64,000 nt of DNA from Vitrella brassicaformis CCMP3155. Taxonomy: Eukaryota; Protista; Chromerida. The translations under genes were made by a program, and so were the position numbers. The notes below the pieces were generated by a model, which was given only the letters and a program-made list of their open reading frames with translations, did no database searches and had not been told where the DNA came from. Shown in pieces: positions 41,543 through 48,299 of this stretch (within the stretch, counting starts at the first letter, position 1; the number at the start of each line of letters is the position of its first letter). The stretch is taken from NCBI GenBank assembly GCA_001179505.1, contig CDMY01000571.1:248001-312000 (forward strand). The letters run 5' to 3'.

Positions 41543-42865
41543 ATGACGGATTCCAGCTCGGGCCTCTCCGCCTTCCCGACTCATGACGGTACCGCGAAGC
41601 TCATCAAGGTTATCCAAGACGGCCCTCTCTCTGGCAAGAAGGTCCGCCGCCTCATCAAGAAGAAAGGGGCTGATGCTGCAGTGCTCGTCGGCCATCTGAG
41701 CCTCATTGAGATTGCCCTCAAGCATCATGGAGAGGGCCCCGTCAGCGACCGCACTCTCCACGCCATCGCAGAGCTGCTGTCGGGCGGCGCTGACCCTGAC
41801 CATGGCCGCGTCGTTTGCAGGGCAGTGCGGTGTCATGACTATGCGCTGGTGGACCTCCTGCTCGACAACCACGCCGATCTGAAGGGGCTGTGTCTGCTGC
41901 ACATGATCGCTGAGAGTGACCACCAACCGGCCGCTGAGAAGCTGCGGCTGGTAAGACAGCTGATCGACCACGACCCGGCCATCGTCAAGGAAGTCGACAC
42001 TCACGGCCGCCATCCCCTCTCGTGCTTCTGCCGCCATCCCCTGCCAGAGGCTTGGCTGCAGGAGGCCCTTCTCGACCTTCACTACCAGAATGGAGCAAAG
42101 ACAGACACCCCAGACAGTGACGGCTACCGGCCGCTGCACCACGCCATGCACACTGGCGACAAGACCACGGTCCGCTGGCTGTGTGGCAAGACCAACGACA
42201 TCGATGCCAGGGCCAGCCGGGTCACCGCCCTCAAGCTGGGTGCACTCAACGGCCTGCCAACGAAGCTCCTGCGTGTGCTGCTGGTCCACGGCGCGTCGCC
42301 ATCCGAGGCCACACTGAGGGCGGGCCGCGCACTCAGGAGCGAGGAGTGGGAGAGGCGGGTCACGAGGGCTTATCTCGATTACCTCAACAAGAACGTGCCC
42401 CGGCTGGTCATCGAAAACATCAACCGCACCCTTCGCGCCCTCCGCTCGCCCTTCGCTTCCCGCGAGTGGCGGCGATCCTTCCCTCGCGCATCCCTGCCAG
42501 CGGAGATGGTCACACACATCCTGCAGTTCGCCGCCCACCCTCGCCCCATCCCCATCGCTGACGAGAGGCTCGCCAGCCGCATCAACACCGCCGTCGGCCA
42601 CTACTGTGCCCTCACCGCCAAGCTGATCGCCAAGAGGGGCAATGGAGAAAACGTCGGTCCGATGCGATGCTTCATGGTTGGCGGTCGCCGTCTGGGTGTG
42701 TGCGAGGTGGTGTCTCGAGCAATCAAGGATGAGGCCCGGCTGTACCAGTGCGATTGGCGGCCCTCCGCATCGACAACGGTCTTCCCGTGGCAGCATTTGG
42801 AGGGGCTGCACCTGTCTGGTGATGATCTGGAGCACGAGATGTTCGAGTCGCTGGGCCTCGAGTGA
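41543..42865 (+). CDS. Intronless 440-aa ankyrin-repeat-like protein, same family as 4995-6776
   Basis: LLSGGADPD, GRHPLSCFC, GYRPLHHAMHTG, VTALKLGALNG, LLVHGASP; C-terminus RINTAVGHY..PMRCF..RLGVCEVVSRAIKDEARLY matches the other copy. Confidence 0.9.
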   Translation: MTDSSSGLSAFPTHDGTAKLIKVIQDGPLSGKKVRRLIKKKGADAAVLVGHLSLIEIALKHHGEGPVSDRTLHAIAELLSGGADPDHGRVVCRAVRCHDYALVDLLLDNHADLKGLCLLHMIAESDHQPAAEKLRLVRQLIDHDPAIVKEVDTHGRHPLSCFCRHPLPEAWLQEALLDLHYQNGAKTDTPDSDGYRPLHHAMHTGDKTTVRWLCGKTNDIDARASRVTALKLGALNGLPTKLLRVLLVHGASPSEATLRAGRALRSEEWERRVTRAYLDYLNKNVPRLVIENINRTLRALRSPFASREWRRSFPRASLPAEMVTHILQFAAHPRPIPIADERLASRINTAVGHYCALTAKLIAKRGNGENVGPMRCFMVGGRRLGVCEVVSRAIKDEARLYQCDWRPSASTTVFPWQHLEGLHLSGDDLEHEMFESLGLE

Positions 42866-43139
42866 GTGATGCGTGTGGGTGTGGTCTGGTGTGGTCAAGA
42901 CTTTATTCGTCGAGCTGCGTGCAGGATGGTCCTCTCTGTACTGAGTTGCTTGTTGCATGATTGCATGATTGATTGGACGTTGGCGATGTGTGCGTGCACT
43001 CGTGCGGTGAGAGAGTGTATTTGCAGGACAGACATGGATGAGATCTATGCATACAGACACTAACTGGGTGCATCAAAAGGCATGCGGGGGCCCCCGAGGG
43101 GCGCGAGCTAGACGGAGGCTACTCTCGAATCTCGCCGAG

Positions 43140-45106
43140 ATGGCGGCACCCGCCCAGCAGCAGGAGCAGGAGCAGGAGGAGCCGCCCAACGTGGCGCGGC
43201 TGGCCTTCAACTGCAAGTGCGAGAGAACCAACCCCGGCGAAAGTGTTAACGTGAGGATAACCAGCCCGGACGACAGAAACCTCTTCCGGGTGAGCTGGGG
43301 AGGGCAGGGAGACCCTCCTTCTGCGTCATGATGGCCATGAGACACGGTTGGTGTGCTCCTGCAGGCTGTGCGGCTCACCACAACTCCTGTGGCGTGGCCC
43401 CAATGGAAGTCAAGTCTGCTTGACTTTGACACTCAGGCAAGCGACAGGAGATGGCCACGTTCGGCTTGGGGCCGGGTTCACAGAAAGGTCTTTGGCCTGG
43501 CTGCAGGATGCCCTCAACCTCAACTACAAGTATTTCTTGCAGAATGACGTGGGGGACCACCGGCGCGAGGAGGTGAGAAGGTCGAGGGACAACCATGCAT
43601 GTCGACAGACAGGCAGTCTTTCTTTCGCCCATCTCTCTGCTCTGTGTGCGCAGGGGGGATTGGACTGGGTTCCCGCGAGAGCACTCAATGAGGTCGGTTT
43701 CTGTTTCTATCAGCTCGATTGTTTGTTCGTTGCGGTCATTGATTCTTTCCATGTGTGTCAGACGGGCGGTAGCGTTCGTGCCGTGTGTCTCGTGCGCGGC
43801 TACAAGACCGTTATGCACGACGTCTGGGGCGACCCTGAAGAGACTCGCGTCGATGTCGTCGAAATGCCCAGAAACGTACGCACCGAGCCACCAAACCAAT
43901 ATGCAACCGCCCATTGCCCCCGCAACCGGAATCGGTGTGTGTCGCCTTCCATACCTGCCTCCCTCCCTCCCTGTGTGTGTGTGTGTGTGTCTGTCTGTGT
44001 CCTGTCTCCATTCTGCTGACTCATTCAGTATGGCCAGCCGCCGCCCCCGCGCCCTGCGCCAGTGCAGGCGGTCCGCGACATACGAGTTCTCAACGAAATC
44101 ATGGCAGATCTACGCAACCACCGAAACAACCAAAACGCCGGGGAAGCCAACCGAGGTGGCGGAGCGCGGGCACTGCTCCAACCTCCCCAGCCACAGCCAC
44201 AGCCGCAGCTGATTCCCCGGCCCCAGCCTGCCGTCGCTGATGCCCCAGCTGCGGCCGCTGCTGCTGCTGCTCCAGCTGCGGCCGCTGCCCGGGATGTTGA
44301 TGCCCGGAATGCTGCAGCCCGGGCTGCCGCTGCCCGGGCTGCTGCTGCCCGGGCTGCTGCTGCCCCGGCCGCTGCTGCCGCTGCCCCGGCTGCTGCTGCC
44401 GCTGCTTCGCCGGCGTCATCCTGCTCGTCGTTTGAATCCGCTGCCTCGTCAAGGCCCTCGTCGGCCACCCACTGCAAGCGGCCCCCTGCTGAGTCAGAGG
44501 AGGCCAAGGGCGCCAAGAAAACCATGAACGAGTCGCCCAGCCGCGGCGAGCTCAGGACGGCCCTGGCGGGGGGCAGTATGCTGGCGCGGGATGTGGTGGA
44601 GGGCCTGCCACTGGAGATCGTCAAGGTGGGTGGATGTGTGGATGTGTTGGTGTCTCCTTAGTAGGTGATGTCTCGCCCATTTTGTGTGGTGCTGGGAATG
44701 AATGGCATATGGATGCAGGAAGTGTTGGCTGAGCGTAACAAGGAGGTGGAGATGCTCAGCACCATCGTGGGCAAGAAGGAGTACGAGCAGTCCAACATGT
44801 GCGTTGTCTGCATGGAAGCACGCAAGGAGGTCGTCCTTCTGCCGGTAGGTACTACACATCGTGCGTGTGCCCTCTTGGCTTTTCTGCGCATAATCGATGT
44901 AGGCCTTTCTGTCCGTTCACCTGCAGTGTCGGCACCAGTGCATCTGCCGGGACTGCGCTAACAAGTTGCGGCAGGGTCCGGCGTCCTGGAAGTGCCCCAT
45001 GTGTCAGCAGATGGCCAACGAGATCATCGTAAGTGAACTCCTCGACGCAGGCGCGAGCCTCCGAAAGCGTTTTCTTTGCTTTTAACAGGTAGTGTTCATC
45101 CCCTGA
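43140..45106 (+). CDS. CBM20-like domain + Ala-rich linker + C3HC4 RING (putative E3 ligase), paralog 1
   Basis: N-terminus ARLAFNCKCERTNPGESVNV..AVRLTT..WPQWK..NYKYFL..LDW; RING CVVC-x11-CRH-x3-CRDC..CPMC; final exon VVFIP* at 45089-45106; one GC-AG intron. Confidence 0.8.
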
Positions 45107-45620
45107 CTGACCGAGCCATCCATCGGCACATACATGGAGCATTCACTATCATACACCACGCAGAGGGAGAGGGGGGCCACTCATTCTGCATGCCTATACT
45201 CGATTTTTAGCCATCAGGTTGCATAACACCAAGATTTTGGCCATACGAGACAATTGGGAGAGGGCAGGGAGGCAGCCTCAGGGGAGGGGAGGGGAGCGAA
45301 GAGTGGGGTGAGGGACACAATGCAGTCGGGAGCACCACAAGGATGCGACTGGTCTCACACTCGTACATGAATGAGTTGGAGGGAGACATCGAGATACTGT
45401 GTAATCAGACTGCCGGTGAGTCTCAAAGATAAAAACGCGCTCGGCAGAAGGTCGACCTGGCGCGAGACGCTCGTCAGCCCTAAGCAGCTGTGTAGCTATA
45501 GGATGCGCTGAGCTCCAGTTGTCCTTGGCCATTTCGGAACGCATGCCATGCTTGGGGGAGGCCCCCACGAAGCGAGCTTCCCACTGGCAGTCTCCGTTTT
45601 TTCGGCCTCTGGACTCAAAG

Positions 45621-47001
45621 ATGGCGGCGCGTATCCAATTCCATTGCTTGTGTGGCATCACCGTGCCTGGGGACATTGTGCACATCACCATCCGCGGCCC
45701 CGACGCTGGACCACTGGAGTATCCGCTGCTGACGGACAACAGGGAGTGGCCCCACTGGAAGACCCTCCCGCTCGAGTTTGTGGTGCGCGGCGCCCTCAGA
45801 CTCACCTACAAGTACTTCATCAAACGAGACGACGGGGGAGGATTCCTCAGAGATGAGGTGAGGAGGGGTGGGGTGGGGTCCAGAGGAACGCCCTCTCTCT
45901 ATGCATGATTGTTGATGCTCCCTACCTCTCCTCTGCGTGTGTGGCCTGTGTGTATGCAGTTTCACTGGGGCAGCCGCTCGGTGACGTTGCTTCAAGGTCA
46001 CGCACACGTCGTTTCCGACTTCTGGGGTGACATCCAGCGCACACGCGTCGAGTGGCAGCGCATGGCACCGGCACCGAACCCTGCACAGGGCCTCCAGCCC
46101 GCATGGGTACACACAGACACACACACAGCCTCGCACTCATTTCAACACATCCTTCCACCCCTCCCTATATCTCTCCCCTTGGCAGCCACCAGCAGCAGCA
46201 GCGGCAGCCCCACAGCAGCCAGCGGTGGGTGGTGCGGGTGGTGCGGTGCTGGCGAATGCCGTGTCTGCCTGCGCGCTGCGGTTGTCCAAGGAGGAGGAGT
46301 TGAAGCAGCAGGTGCGTCGCGCGGCCAGCAACAGCCTGTTGGTGCGAGAGAACCTGGAGGAGATGCCGCTGGAGATGATCCGCGAGTTGATGCACGACAG
46401 GCGGCGTGACCTGGAGTTGCTCGCCGTTATGGTGGGCAAGAAGGAGGCGCAGGAGCAGGAGACATGCATCATCTGCTGCGAGAAGGTCCAATAGCCAGTG
46501 AAGCAAGGCAAAGGAATGTCGATTGCGGAGTATGAGACACGCTGCTGTTGTTCTTCTGTGTTGTGGATTGTGTGTTGGGTGGTTGTAGGAGAAGGAAGTT
46601 GTCTTCATACCGGTACGCACACTTGTTGTGTTGGTGGATAGGCCAGTGGACGGAGGGAGGGAGGGAGACAACACTCGCTGTATCTCTGTGTCTCTGCCTC
46701 CGTTTGTGCCTCTCTGTCTGTCTGTCTATCTGTCTGTCTGTCTCTCTGTCTGTCCGTTTGTCTTCCACATTTGGCCGCACTGCATGCAGTGCCGTCACCA
46801 GTGTATCTGCTCAAGTAGGTGCCGGCCCCTCCAGTGCCAGACCGATGGCTGTCTGTCGACATCACTCCCTTCACCCATGTCTATCCGCTTGTGTGTCTGT
46901 TTGTGTGTGCAGCGTGTTGGCGCAAGCTGCGGGATCGCGGCATCTACAAGTGTCCCATTTGCCAACAAATCCCGGCGCGCATCATCCTGCCCGCCAAGTG
47001 A
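45621..47001 (+). CDS. CBM20-like domain + C3HC4 RING, paralog 2
   Basis: MAARIQFHCLCGITVPGDIVHI..WPHWK..TYKYFIK..FHW; RING CIIC-EKEKEVVFIP-CRHQCIC..C..CPIC; TGA 46999-47001. Confidence 0.8.
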
Positions 47002-47973
47002 CACACCCACCCGTCACCCAACCTACACCTACATTGGCAATCAAACACCATTTTTGCATCGTTCATCGGTTCTGGTCAATGGAGGGTCTGAGTTTCTGTT
47101 CTGTTTTGATCGATCCATGTATGAGTATAAGGCAGTGTGAGGGAGGCAAAGAGGGGGGAGGGGGTGAGGGAGATCGGTAGGACTATTGTTAGGCAGACCC
47201 CGGCACAGCAGAGGGATAGATACCCCGTGACGCGGCGCCGCCGTGTGTGGAGGACACAGACAGGGACACACACACACACATAACACATGGGCTTTTGAAC
47301 GGTTGACGGTGAGACAGAGCGTCAGGGCTTTGTGGTCTAGGAGGGGAGGGCGTGGGTACTCAATTGTCACTCACTGCTCTGTTGTCTGTGGCCGATCATG
47401 TGTGGTCCATCGGTAAGTGAGTCAATGGTGTGGGGCATGGATGGGAAATGGGCGACACGGGGAGGGAGGGAGGGAGGGAGGGGTGAAGTGCTTGATAAAT
47501 CGATGCAGACACACAGATGGACATATCATATGCACACGCGAGGACATCTTTCAAGCAGATGTTAAAGGCAGACGCAAGGACTTAAATGTCCCTCCATGTC
47601 CGTCTCTTGTCTCGTCCCAATACTCATTGCGATGCGAACGCAGGCACAGAGTCGGCGAAAGCCATGTTGCAGTCATACAATGCATGACCTTCATCCAACT
47701 CATGCCCAGCGCATGCACCGCAACAGCAGACAGGAAGATAGCCGCACCCATCGAGTCGAAAACGTATGGCAACACGCCCATTACCGGTGAGTGCATCGGC
47801 ATCATACACACGAACACGCAGATTCACTCACTCACTGGCCCTCACGTCGTCACTACTGTACGTGCACATCAACACGGATATAAAGCGTGGCCAAAACTGC
47901 ATGGGCGCCTGAGTGAATGAATGAATGAATGAAAGGACGGACGGATGGATGGATGGAGAGAGCATGATTGGAT

Positions 47974-48273
47974 NNNNNNNNNNNNNNNNNNNNNNNNNNN
48001 NNNNNNNNNNNNNNNNNNNNNNNNNNNNNNNNNNNNNNNNNNNNNNNNNNNNNNNNNNNNNNNNNNNNNNNNNNNNNNNNNNNNNNNNNNNNNNNNNNNN
48101 NNNNNNNNNNNNNNNNNNNNNNNNNNNNNNNNNNNNNNNNNNNNNNNNNNNNNNNNNNNNNNNNNNNNNNNNNNNNNNNNNNNNNNNNNNNNNNNNNNNN
48201 NNNNNNNNNNNNNNNNNNNNNNNNNNNNNNNNNNNNNNNNNNNNNNNNNNNNNNNNNNNNNNNNNNNNNNNNN
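47974..48273. other. Assembly gap (300 N)
   Basis: Run of N. Confidence 1.
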
Positions 48274-48299
48274 GGGCGATCTTTGCCGGCTTGAAGCGG

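What the first reader, a model, noticed from the sequence alone, without database searches (positions are those of the whole stretch)
43140..47001. Tandem CBM20-like + RING fusions: a possible single-chain laforin-malin analogue that ubiquitinates starch-granule proteins
Seen: both paralogs begin with a ~100-aa beta-type domain (F-x-C..T.PG(E/D).V...W..WK..L...YKYF....W), share a helical segment (LL.R..(V/L)E.(L/M)PLE..GKKE) and end in a C3HC4 RING. Known: in animals the CBM20 phosphatase laforin recruits the RING E3 malin to glycogen; laforin homologues occur in Toxoplasma and related alveolates that store amylopectin. Inference: a direct CBM20-RING fusion could target ubiquitination to cytosolic storage glucan. 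Caveat: the usual LG-x-W motif of CBM20 site 1 is missing, so glucan binding may be altered or lost.
Basis: partly seen in the sequence, partly recalled or inferred. Interest (0 to 1): 0.85.

Follow-up and report, generated by a model that had tools for sequence, protein, structure and literature searches.

The report
Divergent starch-binding-domain plus RING ligase pair
Two neighbouring, expressed genes of the alga Vitrella brassicaformis each join a much-altered starch-binding domain (CBM20) to a ubiquitin-ligase RING finger, a compact combination I found described nowhere else, which may tag proteins on the cell's cytosolic starch but whose sugar binding is unproven.

Summary
Window 43140-45106 and 45621-47001 (+ strand) are two tandem paralogous genes of Vitrella brassicaformis CCMP3155, giving proteins of 427 aa and 273 aa. 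Spliced transcript contigs in three runs join the N-terminal exons to the RING exons exactly as modelled.

Both proteins end in a complete C3HC4 RING (PF13920), closest to the cIAP, MGRN1 and MUL1 RINGs.

The N-domain gets no Pfam hit, but it is a divergent CBM20:
- Its only relatives among 1.84 billion representatives are Pfam-certified CBM20 domains, including one on a Chromera CDPK-type kinase.
- Profile-profile probability is 99% (E 9e-18).
- AlphaFold models (pLDDT 87 and 82) match solved CBM20s at Z 9-11, including STBD1 and laforin.

The first site-1 tryptophan (LGxW) is replaced by Leu on a shortened loop. The second site-1 Trp, the Lys and the site-2 aromatic motif (WPxW) are kept.

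Targeting of ubiquitination to cytosolic starch is plausible, because Vitrella stores starch in the cytosol, but it is untested. These are not laforin or malin homologues: there is no phosphatase domain and no NHL repeats. I found no other compact CBM20-RING fusion, though my survey had limited recall. An unchecked scan note reports a RING+CBM20+TLDc gene elsewhere in this genome.

The parts
43140..45106 (+). Gene 1 (P0002, CEM23845.1, 427 aa). Nine exons: 43140-43289, 43365-43436, 43507-43572, 43654-43692, 43762-43875, 44029-44625, 44719-44844, 44927-45028, 45089-45106. The intron 43437-43506 has a GC..AG boundary.
   Evidence: Exon model translated. The annotated product length of 427 aa and the gene span come, and the sequence. 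The spliced 1613-nt contig X8 rec 17 spans 43122-45417 with exon lengths that add up.
43191..43872 (+). Gene 1 divergent CBM20-like domain (aa 18-146, spread over exons 1-5). It carries an insertion (aa ~90-111) that is modelled poorly.
   Evidence: phmmer from P0001:1-115 gives E 6e-11. The AF2 model m9e6fd1efb63f has pLDDT 81.5, with loop 75-96 of the fragment below 50. VIA Z is 8-9.6 to CBM20, CBM41 and CBM26.
43654..43692 (+). 39-nt micro-exon of gene 1 (GGLDWVPARALNE). It encodes the Trp that aligns with the invariant second site-1 Trp of CBM20.
   Evidence: It is needed to reach the 427-aa annotated length and the transcript contig length. The Trp falls in an invariant column of alignment A4.
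44029..44538 (+). Gene 1 low-complexity Ala/Pro/Gln-rich linker (aa 148-317; aa 151-330 are 33% Ala)
44539..44790 (+). Gene 1 conserved helical segment before the RING (aa 318-370: ..MLARDVVEGLPLEIVKEVL..VGKKE)
   Evidence: BLASTP alignment of the paralogs; coordinates
44800..45004 (+). Gene 1 RING finger C3HC4 (aa 374-414), split by an intron after ..VLLP
   Evidence: PF13920 at 52.1 bits against a cut-off of 27; ligand pattern
45621..47001 (+). Gene 2 (P0001, 273 aa). Six exons: 45621-45857, 45960-46106, 46186-46485, 46589-46612, 46790-46814, 46913-47001.
   Evidence: The model is identical to the deposited protein. All five introns appear as GT..AG joints in the RNA-like runs X1/X2/X8 and not in the DNA run X3.
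45624..46058 (+). Gene 2 divergent CBM20-like domain (aa 2-112; exon 1 plus the start of exon 2)
   Evidence: The AF2 model mcadf29e10c83 has pLDDT 87.2 and pTM 0.79. The top Foldseek hits are CBM20s. VIA Z is 9-11 at rmsd 2.2-2.9 over 91-97 residues. hhalign gives 99%. The Atlas gives TM 0.78-0.79.
46276..46455 (+). Gene 2 conserved helical segment (aa 159-218: ..SLLVRENLEEMPLEMIRELM..VGKKE)
46465..46962 (+). Gene 2 RING finger C3HC4 (aa 222-261), split by three introns
   Evidence: PF13920 at 47.6 bits against a cut-off of 27. The closest solved RING is cIAP2, 3eb5, at E 1.1e-8. Ligand pattern.

Best explanation
Two tandemly duplicated, transcribed genes of Vitrella brassicaformis encode small RING-type ubiquitin ligases with no sign of a signal or transit peptide, so they are probably cytosolic. 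The targeting module of each is a strongly diverged CBM20 starch-binding domain at the N-terminus. It is most closely related to the CBM20 that alveolate CDPK2-type kinases carry.

The probable mechanism has three steps. The CBM20-derived domain docks the protein on the cytosolic starch or alpha-glucan surface, mainly through the retained site-2-like WPxW platform and the remnant of site 1 (Trp + Lys). The helical segment and the short C-terminal tail form an IAP-like RING unit, possibly a dimer. The RING recruits an E2~ubiquitin and modifies proteins that sit on the granule, such as starch-metabolising enzymes.

Shown: gene structure, expression and splicing, CBM20 homology and fold, an intact RING, and loss of the LGxW tryptophan. 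Inferred: glucan binding, E3 activity, dimerisation, cytosolic location and the identity of the substrates.
For: - Gene models equal the deposited proteins.
- Spliced contigs join the N-domain exons to the RING exons.
- In the exhaustive phmmer search with the N-domain, the only domain-long (full-length) hits besides the paralog are P0005, P0007 and P0008 (E 1.5e-6 to 2.8e-4). All three are PF00686 CBM_20 at E 1e-14 to 1e-18.
- P0007 is Chromera velia Cvel_32861. Its kinase domain is CDPK-type: E 6e-103 to a Cryptosporidium CDPK and E 1e-76 to a chain deposited as calcium-dependent protein kinase 2, 4mvf.
- hhalign of the paralog pair against certified CBM20s gives 99.0%, E 9.2e-18, over 105 columns.
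- The two-sequence profile's only PDB hit is a CBM20, 7czj, at E 0.12.
- The AF2 model has pLDDT 87.2. Foldseek and VIA-align top lists are almost entirely CBM20: Z 11.0 glucoamylase, 10.7 STBD1, 10.0 GPCPD1, 9.1 laforin.
- The independent ESM Atlas model gives TM 0.78-0.79 to CBM20 clusters and a feature score of 0.97.
- K64, W82, W46 and W101 of P0001 fall in columns invariant across certified CBM20s, and the WPxW motif aligns with the Y-P-T-W of the 7czj CBM20.
- The RING scores 47.6 and 52.1 bits on PF13920 and has all 8 ligands. It is nearest to the RINGs of cIAP1/2, MGRN1, MUL1, MEX3C and XIAP, all named ubiquitin ligases in their PDB entries.
- The domain starts at residue 2 of P0001, and transcript contigs begin only 18-29 nt upstream of the start codons, so no targeting peptide is present.
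- Vitrella stores starch in the cytosol as a sheath around the pyrenoid (bioRxiv 10.64898/2026.09.25.754361).
- In Toxoplasma, CDPK2 regulates amylopectin through its CBM20 (PMC9254107).
- Bringing an E3 to glycogen with a CBM20 is enough to cause ubiquitination and lysosomal clearance in human cells (PMC13345935).
Against: - Pfam PF00686 gives no hit on either protein, even at E<=10.
- The site-1 Trp of the LGxW motif, invariant in every certified CBM20 aligned here, is replaced by Leu, and the loop is 2-4 residues shorter in both paralogs. The Asn of the GNR motif is Ser.
- In gene 1 the segment carrying the second site-1 Trp sits in a 22-residue low-confidence insertion.
- The residue after the last RING Cys, Arg in cIAP2, is Gln in both proteins.
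- CBM41 and CBM26 and a few non-CBM beta-sandwiches score nearly as well structurally for gene 1.
- The AF2 alignments contained certified CBM20s, which could bias the models, although the Atlas single-sequence model agrees.
- The neighbouring genes have no link to starch.
- No binding or ligase assay exists.
Confidence: 0.5

Rival explanations
1. The N-domain is a CBM20 relic that no longer binds glucan. It has been re-used as a protein-protein (substrate-receptor) module, so these are ordinary RING E3 ligases with targets unrelated to starch.
For: The canonical site-1 Trp is lost and its loop shortened in both paralogs, and Asn is replaced by Ser in the GNR motif. The divergence is too great for Pfam PF00686. 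The gene-1 insertion disrupts the strand region that carries the second site-1 Trp. In human RNF213, mutating the predicted sugar-binding residues of its CBM20 had no effect on recruitment, so a CBM20 in an E3 need not act through canonical sugar binding (PMC11549300).
Against: Several residues are conserved in both paralogs after roughly 60% sequence divergence: the second site-1 Trp, the Lys of YKY and the aromatic WPxW motif that aligns with site 2. The closest relatives are CBM20s of kinases that, in Toxoplasma, act on amylopectin metabolism.
Confidence: 0.3
2. The CBM20-derived domain is a sensor rather than an anchor. It would bind soluble malto-oligosaccharides or glucan ends with low affinity and switch the ligase on or off, as the glycogen-binding module of AMPK beta modulates that kinase. 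Ubiquitination would then be coupled to carbon status.
For: A partly degraded site 1 with a retained second site is what a low-affinity binder would look like. The domain is joined to the RING by a long flexible linker plus a conserved helical segment that could transmit or mask activity.
Against: There is no direct evidence. The comparison with AMPK beta rests on general knowledge, and AMPK beta carries a CBM48, not a CBM20. No intramolecular contact was modelled.
Confidence: 0.1
3. The N-domain is a generic Ig-like or C2-like beta-sandwich unrelated to CBM20, and the resemblance is due to chance or fold convergence.
For: There is no Pfam hit. Foldseek E-values are only 1e-3 to 1e-2. Some unrelated beta-sandwiches reach Z 8-9 for gene 1.
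Against: The sequence-level evidence is significant and specific. phmmer E is 1.5e-6 against a library of 1.84 billion, to proteins that are certified CBM20s. hhalign gives 99%, E 9e-18. The top 23 structural matches for gene 2 are all CBM20.
Confidence: 0.03

Closest known systems
CBM20 of alveolate CDPK2-type calcium-dependent kinases (Toxoplasma CDPK2; Chromera velia Cvel_32861 = P0007)
   Same: These carry the nearest sequence relatives of the N-domain. The domain sits at the extreme N-terminus, and the signature F-x-C-x-C-x-x-T-x-PG(E/D), WPxW, (E/T)YK and W-G is shared. The logic is the same: a CBM20 places a regulatory enzyme at the storage glucan (PMC9254107).
   Different: The effector here is a RING ligase, not a kinase. 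The kinase CBM20s keep LG(N/S)W and GNR and pass Pfam; the Vitrella domains do not.
Laforin-malin complex of animals (EPM2A CBM20 + dual-specificity phosphatase; NHLRC1 RING + NHL repeats)
   Same: The functional idea is the same: a CBM20 brings a RING E3 to a storage polyglucan. The laforin CBM20 matches the model at Z 9.1 (4rkk).
   Different: This is one chain instead of two. There is no phosphatase domain and there are no NHL repeats (Pfam shows only PF13920). Laforin is not the closest solved CBM20 by structure: Z 9.1 against 11.0 for the best. I did not compare malin's RING.
Human RNF213
   Same: It is a single polypeptide containing both a CBM20-fold domain and a RING, with E3 activity (PMC11549300).
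   Different: RNF213 is a giant dynein-like AAA+ E3 that uses an RZ finger for its E3 activity on bacteria. Its CBM20 is internal (aa 378-515), its ligand is unknown, and it serves immunity rather than storage-glucan metabolism.
IAP / MUL1 / MGRN1 / MEX3C / XIAP / CGRRF1-type RING fingers (Pfam zf-C3HC4_3, PF13920)
   Same: The RING sequence family is the same, and the RING sits at the C-terminus followed by a short tail of 12-13 residues. cIAP2 matches at E 1.1e-8, MGRN1 at 1.1e-6 and MUL1 at 1.6e-6.
   Different: The N-terminal targeting domains differ (BIR, transmembrane, KH and others). Gln replaces the Arg that follows the last Cys in cIAP.
Engineered FKBP-GFP-CBM20 / FRB-HOIL-1L proximity system (Nature 2026, PMC13345935) and STBD1
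   Same: A CBM20 is used to place ubiquitination or autophagy machinery on glycogen. The STBD1 CBM20 is the second-best structural match (Z 10.7).
   Different: HOIL-1L is an RBR ligase that esterifies sugar hydroxyls. A plain RING ligase is expected to modify lysines of proteins. STBD1 has no ligase domain.

Membership tests
CBM20 (CAZy family 20 starch-binding domain; Pfam PF00686) | Beta-sandwich fold of the starch-binding-domain type, about 100 residues | tested here: met
   The AF2 models have pLDDT 87.2 and 81.5. VIA-align gives Z 9-11, rmsd 2.2-2.9 A over 91-97 residues to the CBM20s of glucoamylase, STBD1, CGTase, GPCPD1, beta-amylase and laforin. The Atlas gives TM 0.78-0.79.
CBM20 (CAZy family 20 starch-binding domain; Pfam PF00686) | Recognised by the curated family model (Pfam gathering score 23.3 bits) | tested here: not met
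   Neither P0001, P0001:1-135, P0002 nor the separate exons gives a PF00686 hit, even at E<=10.
CBM20 (CAZy family 20 starch-binding domain; Pfam PF00686) | Demonstrable sequence homology to family members | tested here: met
   phmmer E is 1.5e-6, 1.9e-4 and 2.8e-4 (library of 1.84e9) to proteins that pass PF00686 at E 1e-14 to 1e-18. hhalign gives 99.0%, E 9.2e-18.
CBM20 (CAZy family 20 starch-binding domain; Pfam PF00686) | Binding site 1: two Trp (LGxW and xWE) plus the Lys of YKY and the Asn of GNR | tested here: not met
   The LGxW Trp is replaced by Leu on a shortened loop in both paralogs, and Asn is replaced by Ser. The second Trp and the Lys are kept. The assignment of these motifs to site 1 comes from my knowledge of the glucoamylase and CGTase literature.
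CBM20 (CAZy family 20 starch-binding domain; Pfam PF00686) | Binding site 2: aromatic platform in the (Y/W)-P-x-W segment | tested here: inconclusive
   WPHW and WPQW align with the Y-P-T-W of the 7czj CBM20 and with W/F/Y-P-x-W of the certified relatives. Surface geometry was not examined.
CBM20 (CAZy family 20 starch-binding domain; Pfam PF00686) | Binds starch, amylopectin or cyclodextrin | not testable with these tools
   This needs a binding assay.
RING-type E3 ligase, zf-C3HC4_3 subfamily (PF13920) | Family model passed, and eight zinc ligands in C3HC4 order and spacing | tested here: met
   The scores are 47.6 and 52.1 bits against a cut-off of 27. The pattern C-x2-C-x11-C-x-H-x3-C-x2-C-x11/12-C-x2-C is found in both.
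RING-type E3 ligase, zf-C3HC4_3 subfamily (PF13920) | Residues that activate E2~Ub (the basic 'linchpin' after the last Cys) | tested here: inconclusive
   Gln stands where cIAP2 has Arg (alignment). The effect on activity is unknown.
RING-type E3 ligase, zf-C3HC4_3 subfamily (PF13920) | E2-dependent ubiquitin transfer | not testable with these tools
   This needs an in vitro ubiquitination assay.
Laforin / malin | Laforin: a dual-specificity phosphatase domain after the CBM20. Malin: NHL repeats after the RING. | tested here: not met
   Pfam finds only PF13920 and related RING models in both proteins. The region between the domains is a low-complexity linker plus a helix.

The most novel reading that the evidence does not exclude
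These are resident ubiquitin ligases of the cytosolic starch granule in a photosynthetic relative of apicomplexans. On this reading they are a natural one-chain counterpart of laforin-malin and of the engineered CBM20-HOIL-1L system. They would control starch turnover by ubiquitinating granule-bound enzymes, or mark granules for autophagic breakdown, and they would have been built by joining the CDPK2-type CBM20 to an IAP-like RING.
Probability: 0.3. Interest if true: 0.75.

Novelty: new variant of a known kind. Interest (0 to 1): 0.55.

Why it matters
How storage-glucan granules are regulated after translation is well studied only in animals (laforin-malin, HOIL-1, STBD1) and, for phosphorylation, in Toxoplasma (CDPK2, laforin, GWD).

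A direct fusion of a CBM20-derived domain to a RING would give a simple, testable handle on ubiquitin-dependent control of cytosolic starch in the lineage that links algae to apicomplexan parasites. It would also be a natural precedent for the CBM20-E3 proximity design that was recently shown to clear glycogen.

The domain is also a useful test case for CBM20 binding. It keeps site 2 and half of site 1, so it shows what a CBM20 can lose and still be maintained in two paralogs.

The limits are real. The family appears restricted to Vitrella, and its function is wholly inferred.

Tried and rejected
- **Pfam on separate exons and on whole proteins at E<=10.** No CBM20 hit. The CBM20 call could therefore not rest on Pfam and had to be made through intermediates, profile-profile comparison and fold.
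- **phmmer of the N-domain against PDB sequences.** The only hit was a chance match to ribosomal protein uS15 at E 0.9.
- **The search for homologous proteins with P0001 and with a mixed alignment A3, E up to 10.** It returned no CBM20+RING protein other than P0001 itself. It missed the paralog P0002, so a blank from this word-indexed search says little.
- **ESM Atlas search with whole P0002.** No large cluster combines PF00686 and PF13920. Only clusters of 50 or more members are covered.
- **Literature searches** for CBM20 or starch-binding domain with RING and ubiquitin ligase. They found laforin-malin, RNF213 and the HOIL-1L work, but no compact CBM20-RING protein. The 2026 survey of myzozoan starch metabolism does not mention ubiquitin or RING.
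- **Hits P0003, P0004 and P0006 of the exhaustive search.** I rejected these as short repeat-driven or partial matches.
- **Gene 1 without the 39-nt exon.** My first model gave 414 aa with the terminal mini-exon. I rejected it because the annotation length, the transcript contig length and the conserved Trp all require the exon.
- **Rfam scan of 42800-47300.** Nothing reached any gathering score.
- **Not attempted.** dN/dS between the paralogs, because synonymous sites are saturated at about 40% protein identity.
Full report
**Identity of the DNA and gene models**

The window is GC-rich eukaryotic DNA. A translated stretch of the region retrieves a 273-aa protein of Vitrella brassicaformis CCMP3155 at 100% identity. 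The locus is contig CDMY01000571.1 of GCA_001179505.1.

I built exon models by eye from the sequence and translated them.
- Gene 2 (45621-47001, six exons) gives exactly the deposited 273-aa protein P0001.
- Gene 1 (43140-45106, nine exons) gives the deposited 427-aa protein P0002, CEM23845.1.
- Gene 1 contains a GC..AG intron at 43437-43506 and a 39-nt micro-exon at 43654-43692.
- The finding's coordinates run from the first start codon to the second stop codon.

**Expression and splicing**

Three runs behave like RNA (X1, X2, X8). They lack intron and intergenic depth, and they carry GT..AG joints at 44843/44926, 45028/45089, 45855/45958, 46105/46185, 46483/46587, 46611/46789 and 46814/46913. 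The DNA run X3 lacks all of these joints.
- One X8 contig of 1613 nt runs from 43122 to 45417 through all of gene 1. The 292 nt of that contig not itemised in the table equal the summed length of exons 2-5 (291 nt) plus one boundary base. This confirms the micro-exon and the GC..AG intron.
- Another contig runs through gene 2 from 45592.
- The two genes appear on separate contigs.
- The contigs start 18-29 nt before the start codons. No N-terminal targeting extension is present, and in P0001 the domain begins at residue 2.

**The paralogs**

BLASTP aligns the C-terminal halves at E 1e-31 and the N-domains at E 8e-20. Identity is 40% in the N-domain, 44% in the helical-plus-RING part and 57% in the RING.

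Three intron positions are shared..EE|GG / ..DE|FH, the end of the N-domain, and ..P|CRHQ. The other introns are private to one gene or the other. This points to a tandem DNA duplication of an intron-bearing gene, followed by intron gain or loss. Gene 1 has a 170-residue Ala/Pro/Gln-rich linker where gene 2 has about 45 residues.

**The RING**

Both proteins pass Pfam PF13920, at 47.6 and 52.1 bits against a cut-off of 27. Both have all eight ligands in C3HC4 order.

The nearest solved RINGs are cIAP2 and cIAP1 (E 1e-8), MGRN1, MUL1, MEX3C, BIRC7, CGRRF1, XIAP and MDM2. All of these are named ubiquitin ligases.

The RING is C-terminal and is followed by 12-13 residues. From my own knowledge, IAP- and MDM2-type RINGs have the same layout, dimerise and use that tail. 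Dimerisation here is only an inference. The residue after the last Cys is Gln, where cIAP2 has Arg.

**The N-domain: sequence evidence**

Pfam finds nothing in the N-domain, even at E<=10, whether the exons or the whole proteins are scanned. phmmer against PDB sequences finds nothing meaningful.

An exhaustive phmmer search of residues 1-115 against 1.84 billion representative proteins gave only eight hits at E<=0.001.
- Two are P0001 itself and the paralog (6e-11).
- Three are repeat-driven or partial matches, which I discard.
- Three match over the whole domain: P0005 (1.5e-6), P0007 (1.9e-4) and P0008 (2.8e-4).

All three full-length matches are certified CBM_20 domains, PF00686 at E 5e-18, 5e-16 and 3e-14, and in each the domain lies at the extreme N-terminus.

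P0007 is Chromera velia Cvel_32861. Its kinase domain is of the CDPK type: E 6e-103 to a Cryptosporidium CDPK, and E 1e-76 to 4mvf, a chain deposited as calcium-dependent protein kinase 2. That is the architecture of Toxoplasma CDPK2, which regulates amylopectin through its CBM20 (PMC9254107).

Two further comparisons agree. A profile of only the two Vitrella domains compared with a profile of six certified CBM20s gives hhalign probability 99.0%, E 9.2e-18, over 105 columns. The same two-sequence profile has a single PDB hit, the CBM20 of a maltotetraose-forming amylase (7czj, E 0.12).

**The N-domain: fold evidence**

AlphaFold2 models have pLDDT 87.2 and pTM 0.79 for gene 2, and pLDDT 81.5 for gene 1. 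The gene 1 model has one 22-residue segment below 50.
- For gene 2, Foldseek's top hits are CBM20s.
- The VIA-align re-scoring gives Z 11.0 (glucoamylase), 10.7 (STBD1 CBM20 with maltotetraose), about 10.3 (CGTases), 10.0 (GPCPD1 CBM20), 9.4 (beta-amylase) and 9.1 (laforin). These are at rmsd 2.2-2.9 A over 91-98 of about 103 residues. The starch-binding families CBM41 and CBM26 appear just below.
- Gene 1 gives the same families at Z 8-9.6, but less cleanly separated from other beta-sandwiches.
- The AF2 alignments contained certified CBM20s, which could bias the models. However, the ESM Atlas single-sequence model of P0001 independently matches CBM20-bearing clusters at TM 0.78-0.79 and at feature score 0.97.

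I conclude that the domain is a genuine but strongly diverged CBM20.

**Binding sites**

In alignments with the certified relatives and with 7czj, these columns are invariant: T14, G17, P44, W46, K64 (the Lys of YKY), W82 of P0001 (FHW; LDW in gene 1, encoded by the micro-exon) and W101.

The LG(N/S/G)W motif is invariant in all six certified domains. It is absent from both Vitrella proteins: the loop is 2-4 residues shorter and Leu stands at the Trp position. The Asn of GNR is Ser.

Which motif belongs to which site comes from my knowledge of the glucoamylase and CGTase literature. LGxW, the Lys and the xWE Trp belong to site 1; Y-P-x-W belongs to site 2. On that basis site 1 has lost one of its two aromatic platforms, while the site-2 segment is intact and even more aromatic (W-P-x-W).

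Glucan binding is plausible but could be weak, altered or lost. In gene 1 the second site-1 Trp lies inside the poorly modelled insertion.

**Context**

The neighbouring genes are an ankyrin-repeat protein, an MFS/nodulin-like transporter, a TPR/MSS51-like protein, two products without Pfam hits and a CCB2/CCB4 protein. None is related to starch.

Vitrella stores amylose-containing starch in the cytosol, as a sheath around the pyrenoid (bioRxiv 10.64898/2026.09.25.754361). A cytosolic CBM20 protein would therefore have access to it. That survey of myzozoan starch metabolism never mentions ubiquitin or RING proteins.

**Comparison with known systems**

These are not laforin or malin homologues: there is no phosphatase domain and there are no NHL repeats. 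Among solved CBM20s, laforin's is not the closest (Z 9.1 against 11.0). The resemblance is one of logic only.

Human RNF213 also unites a CBM20 fold and a RING in one chain. It is a giant AAA+ E3 of innate immunity, and the ligand of its CBM20 is unknown (PMC11549300).

A 2026 study showed that tethering HOIL-1L to glycogen through a CBM20 is sufficient for glycogen ubiquitination and lysosomal clearance (PMC13345935). That makes a natural CBM20-E3 fusion mechanistically credible. A plain RING would, however, be expected to modify protein lysines rather than sugar hydroxyls; this point is my inference.

**Distribution and novelty**

The exhaustive N-domain search finds this domain type fused to a RING only in these two Vitrella proteins. 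Word-indexed searches, the Atlas and the literature show no other compact CBM20-RING protein.

These surveys have limited recall. One of them even missed the paralog. Independent fusions that use a canonical CBM20 would also have escaped the N-domain search.

An unchecked first-reader note of this scan (s1-205621) reports a RING+CBM20+TLDc gene elsewhere in the same genome. I could not fetch or test it. If it is real, E3-CBM20 pairing is a recurrent theme in Vitrella rather than a single accident. Another note (s1-248690) is the same stretch read again.

**Verdict**

The structural interpretation, CBM20-like domain plus RING in one chain, is supported. The functional interpretation, ubiquitination targeted to starch, is a reasonable hypothesis that no tool here can test, and I put it at about even odds.

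This is a new domain combination built from known modules. It is restricted to one lineage and has a partly degraded binding site, so its interest is moderate to good rather than exceptional.

Noticed in passing
window 45029-45088 (last intron of gene 1): Nearly the whole 60-nt intron (about 45030-45083) is also carried by other contigs with different flanks and very high depth. The bin depth is 2703 in X1 and 36685 in X8, and about 204 in DNA run X3 against a baseline of about 21. The intron therefore copies a sequence that is repeated roughly tenfold in the genome and sits in a very abundant RNA. There is no Rfam match and no second copy in the window. An introner-like or small-RNA-derived origin is possible.
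   Followed up: partly
window 43437-43506: A 70-nt intron with a GC..AG boundary in gene 1. It is supported indirectly by the length of the transcript contig. The other twelve introns of the two genes are GT..AG.
   Followed up: partly
window 44240-44410: An Ala-rich imperfect repeat, (AARAAA)n, in the gene 1 linker. It attracts multi-mapping contigs, chimeric-looking joints and weak sub-threshold Rfam miRNA-like hits, which are low-complexity artefacts.
   Followed up: partly
window 43944-44004 and 46678-46763: (TG)n and (CTGT)n microsatellites inside introns of both genes. Read laying skipped them as repeats, and the assemblies of the public runs break there.
   Followed up: no
window ~47970-48290: A run of N (assembly gap) just downstream of gene 2.
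   Followed up: no
window 41543-42865 (+): An apparently intronless ankyrin-repeat gene (annotated product 440 aa) lies directly upstream of gene 1. An almost equally long ORF (507 aa) lies on the opposite strand, probably an artefact of the GC-rich sequence.
   Followed up: no
another contig of the same genome (scan note s1-205621): A first-reader note reports a RING + CBM20 + TLDc gene elsewhere in Vitrella.
   Followed up: no
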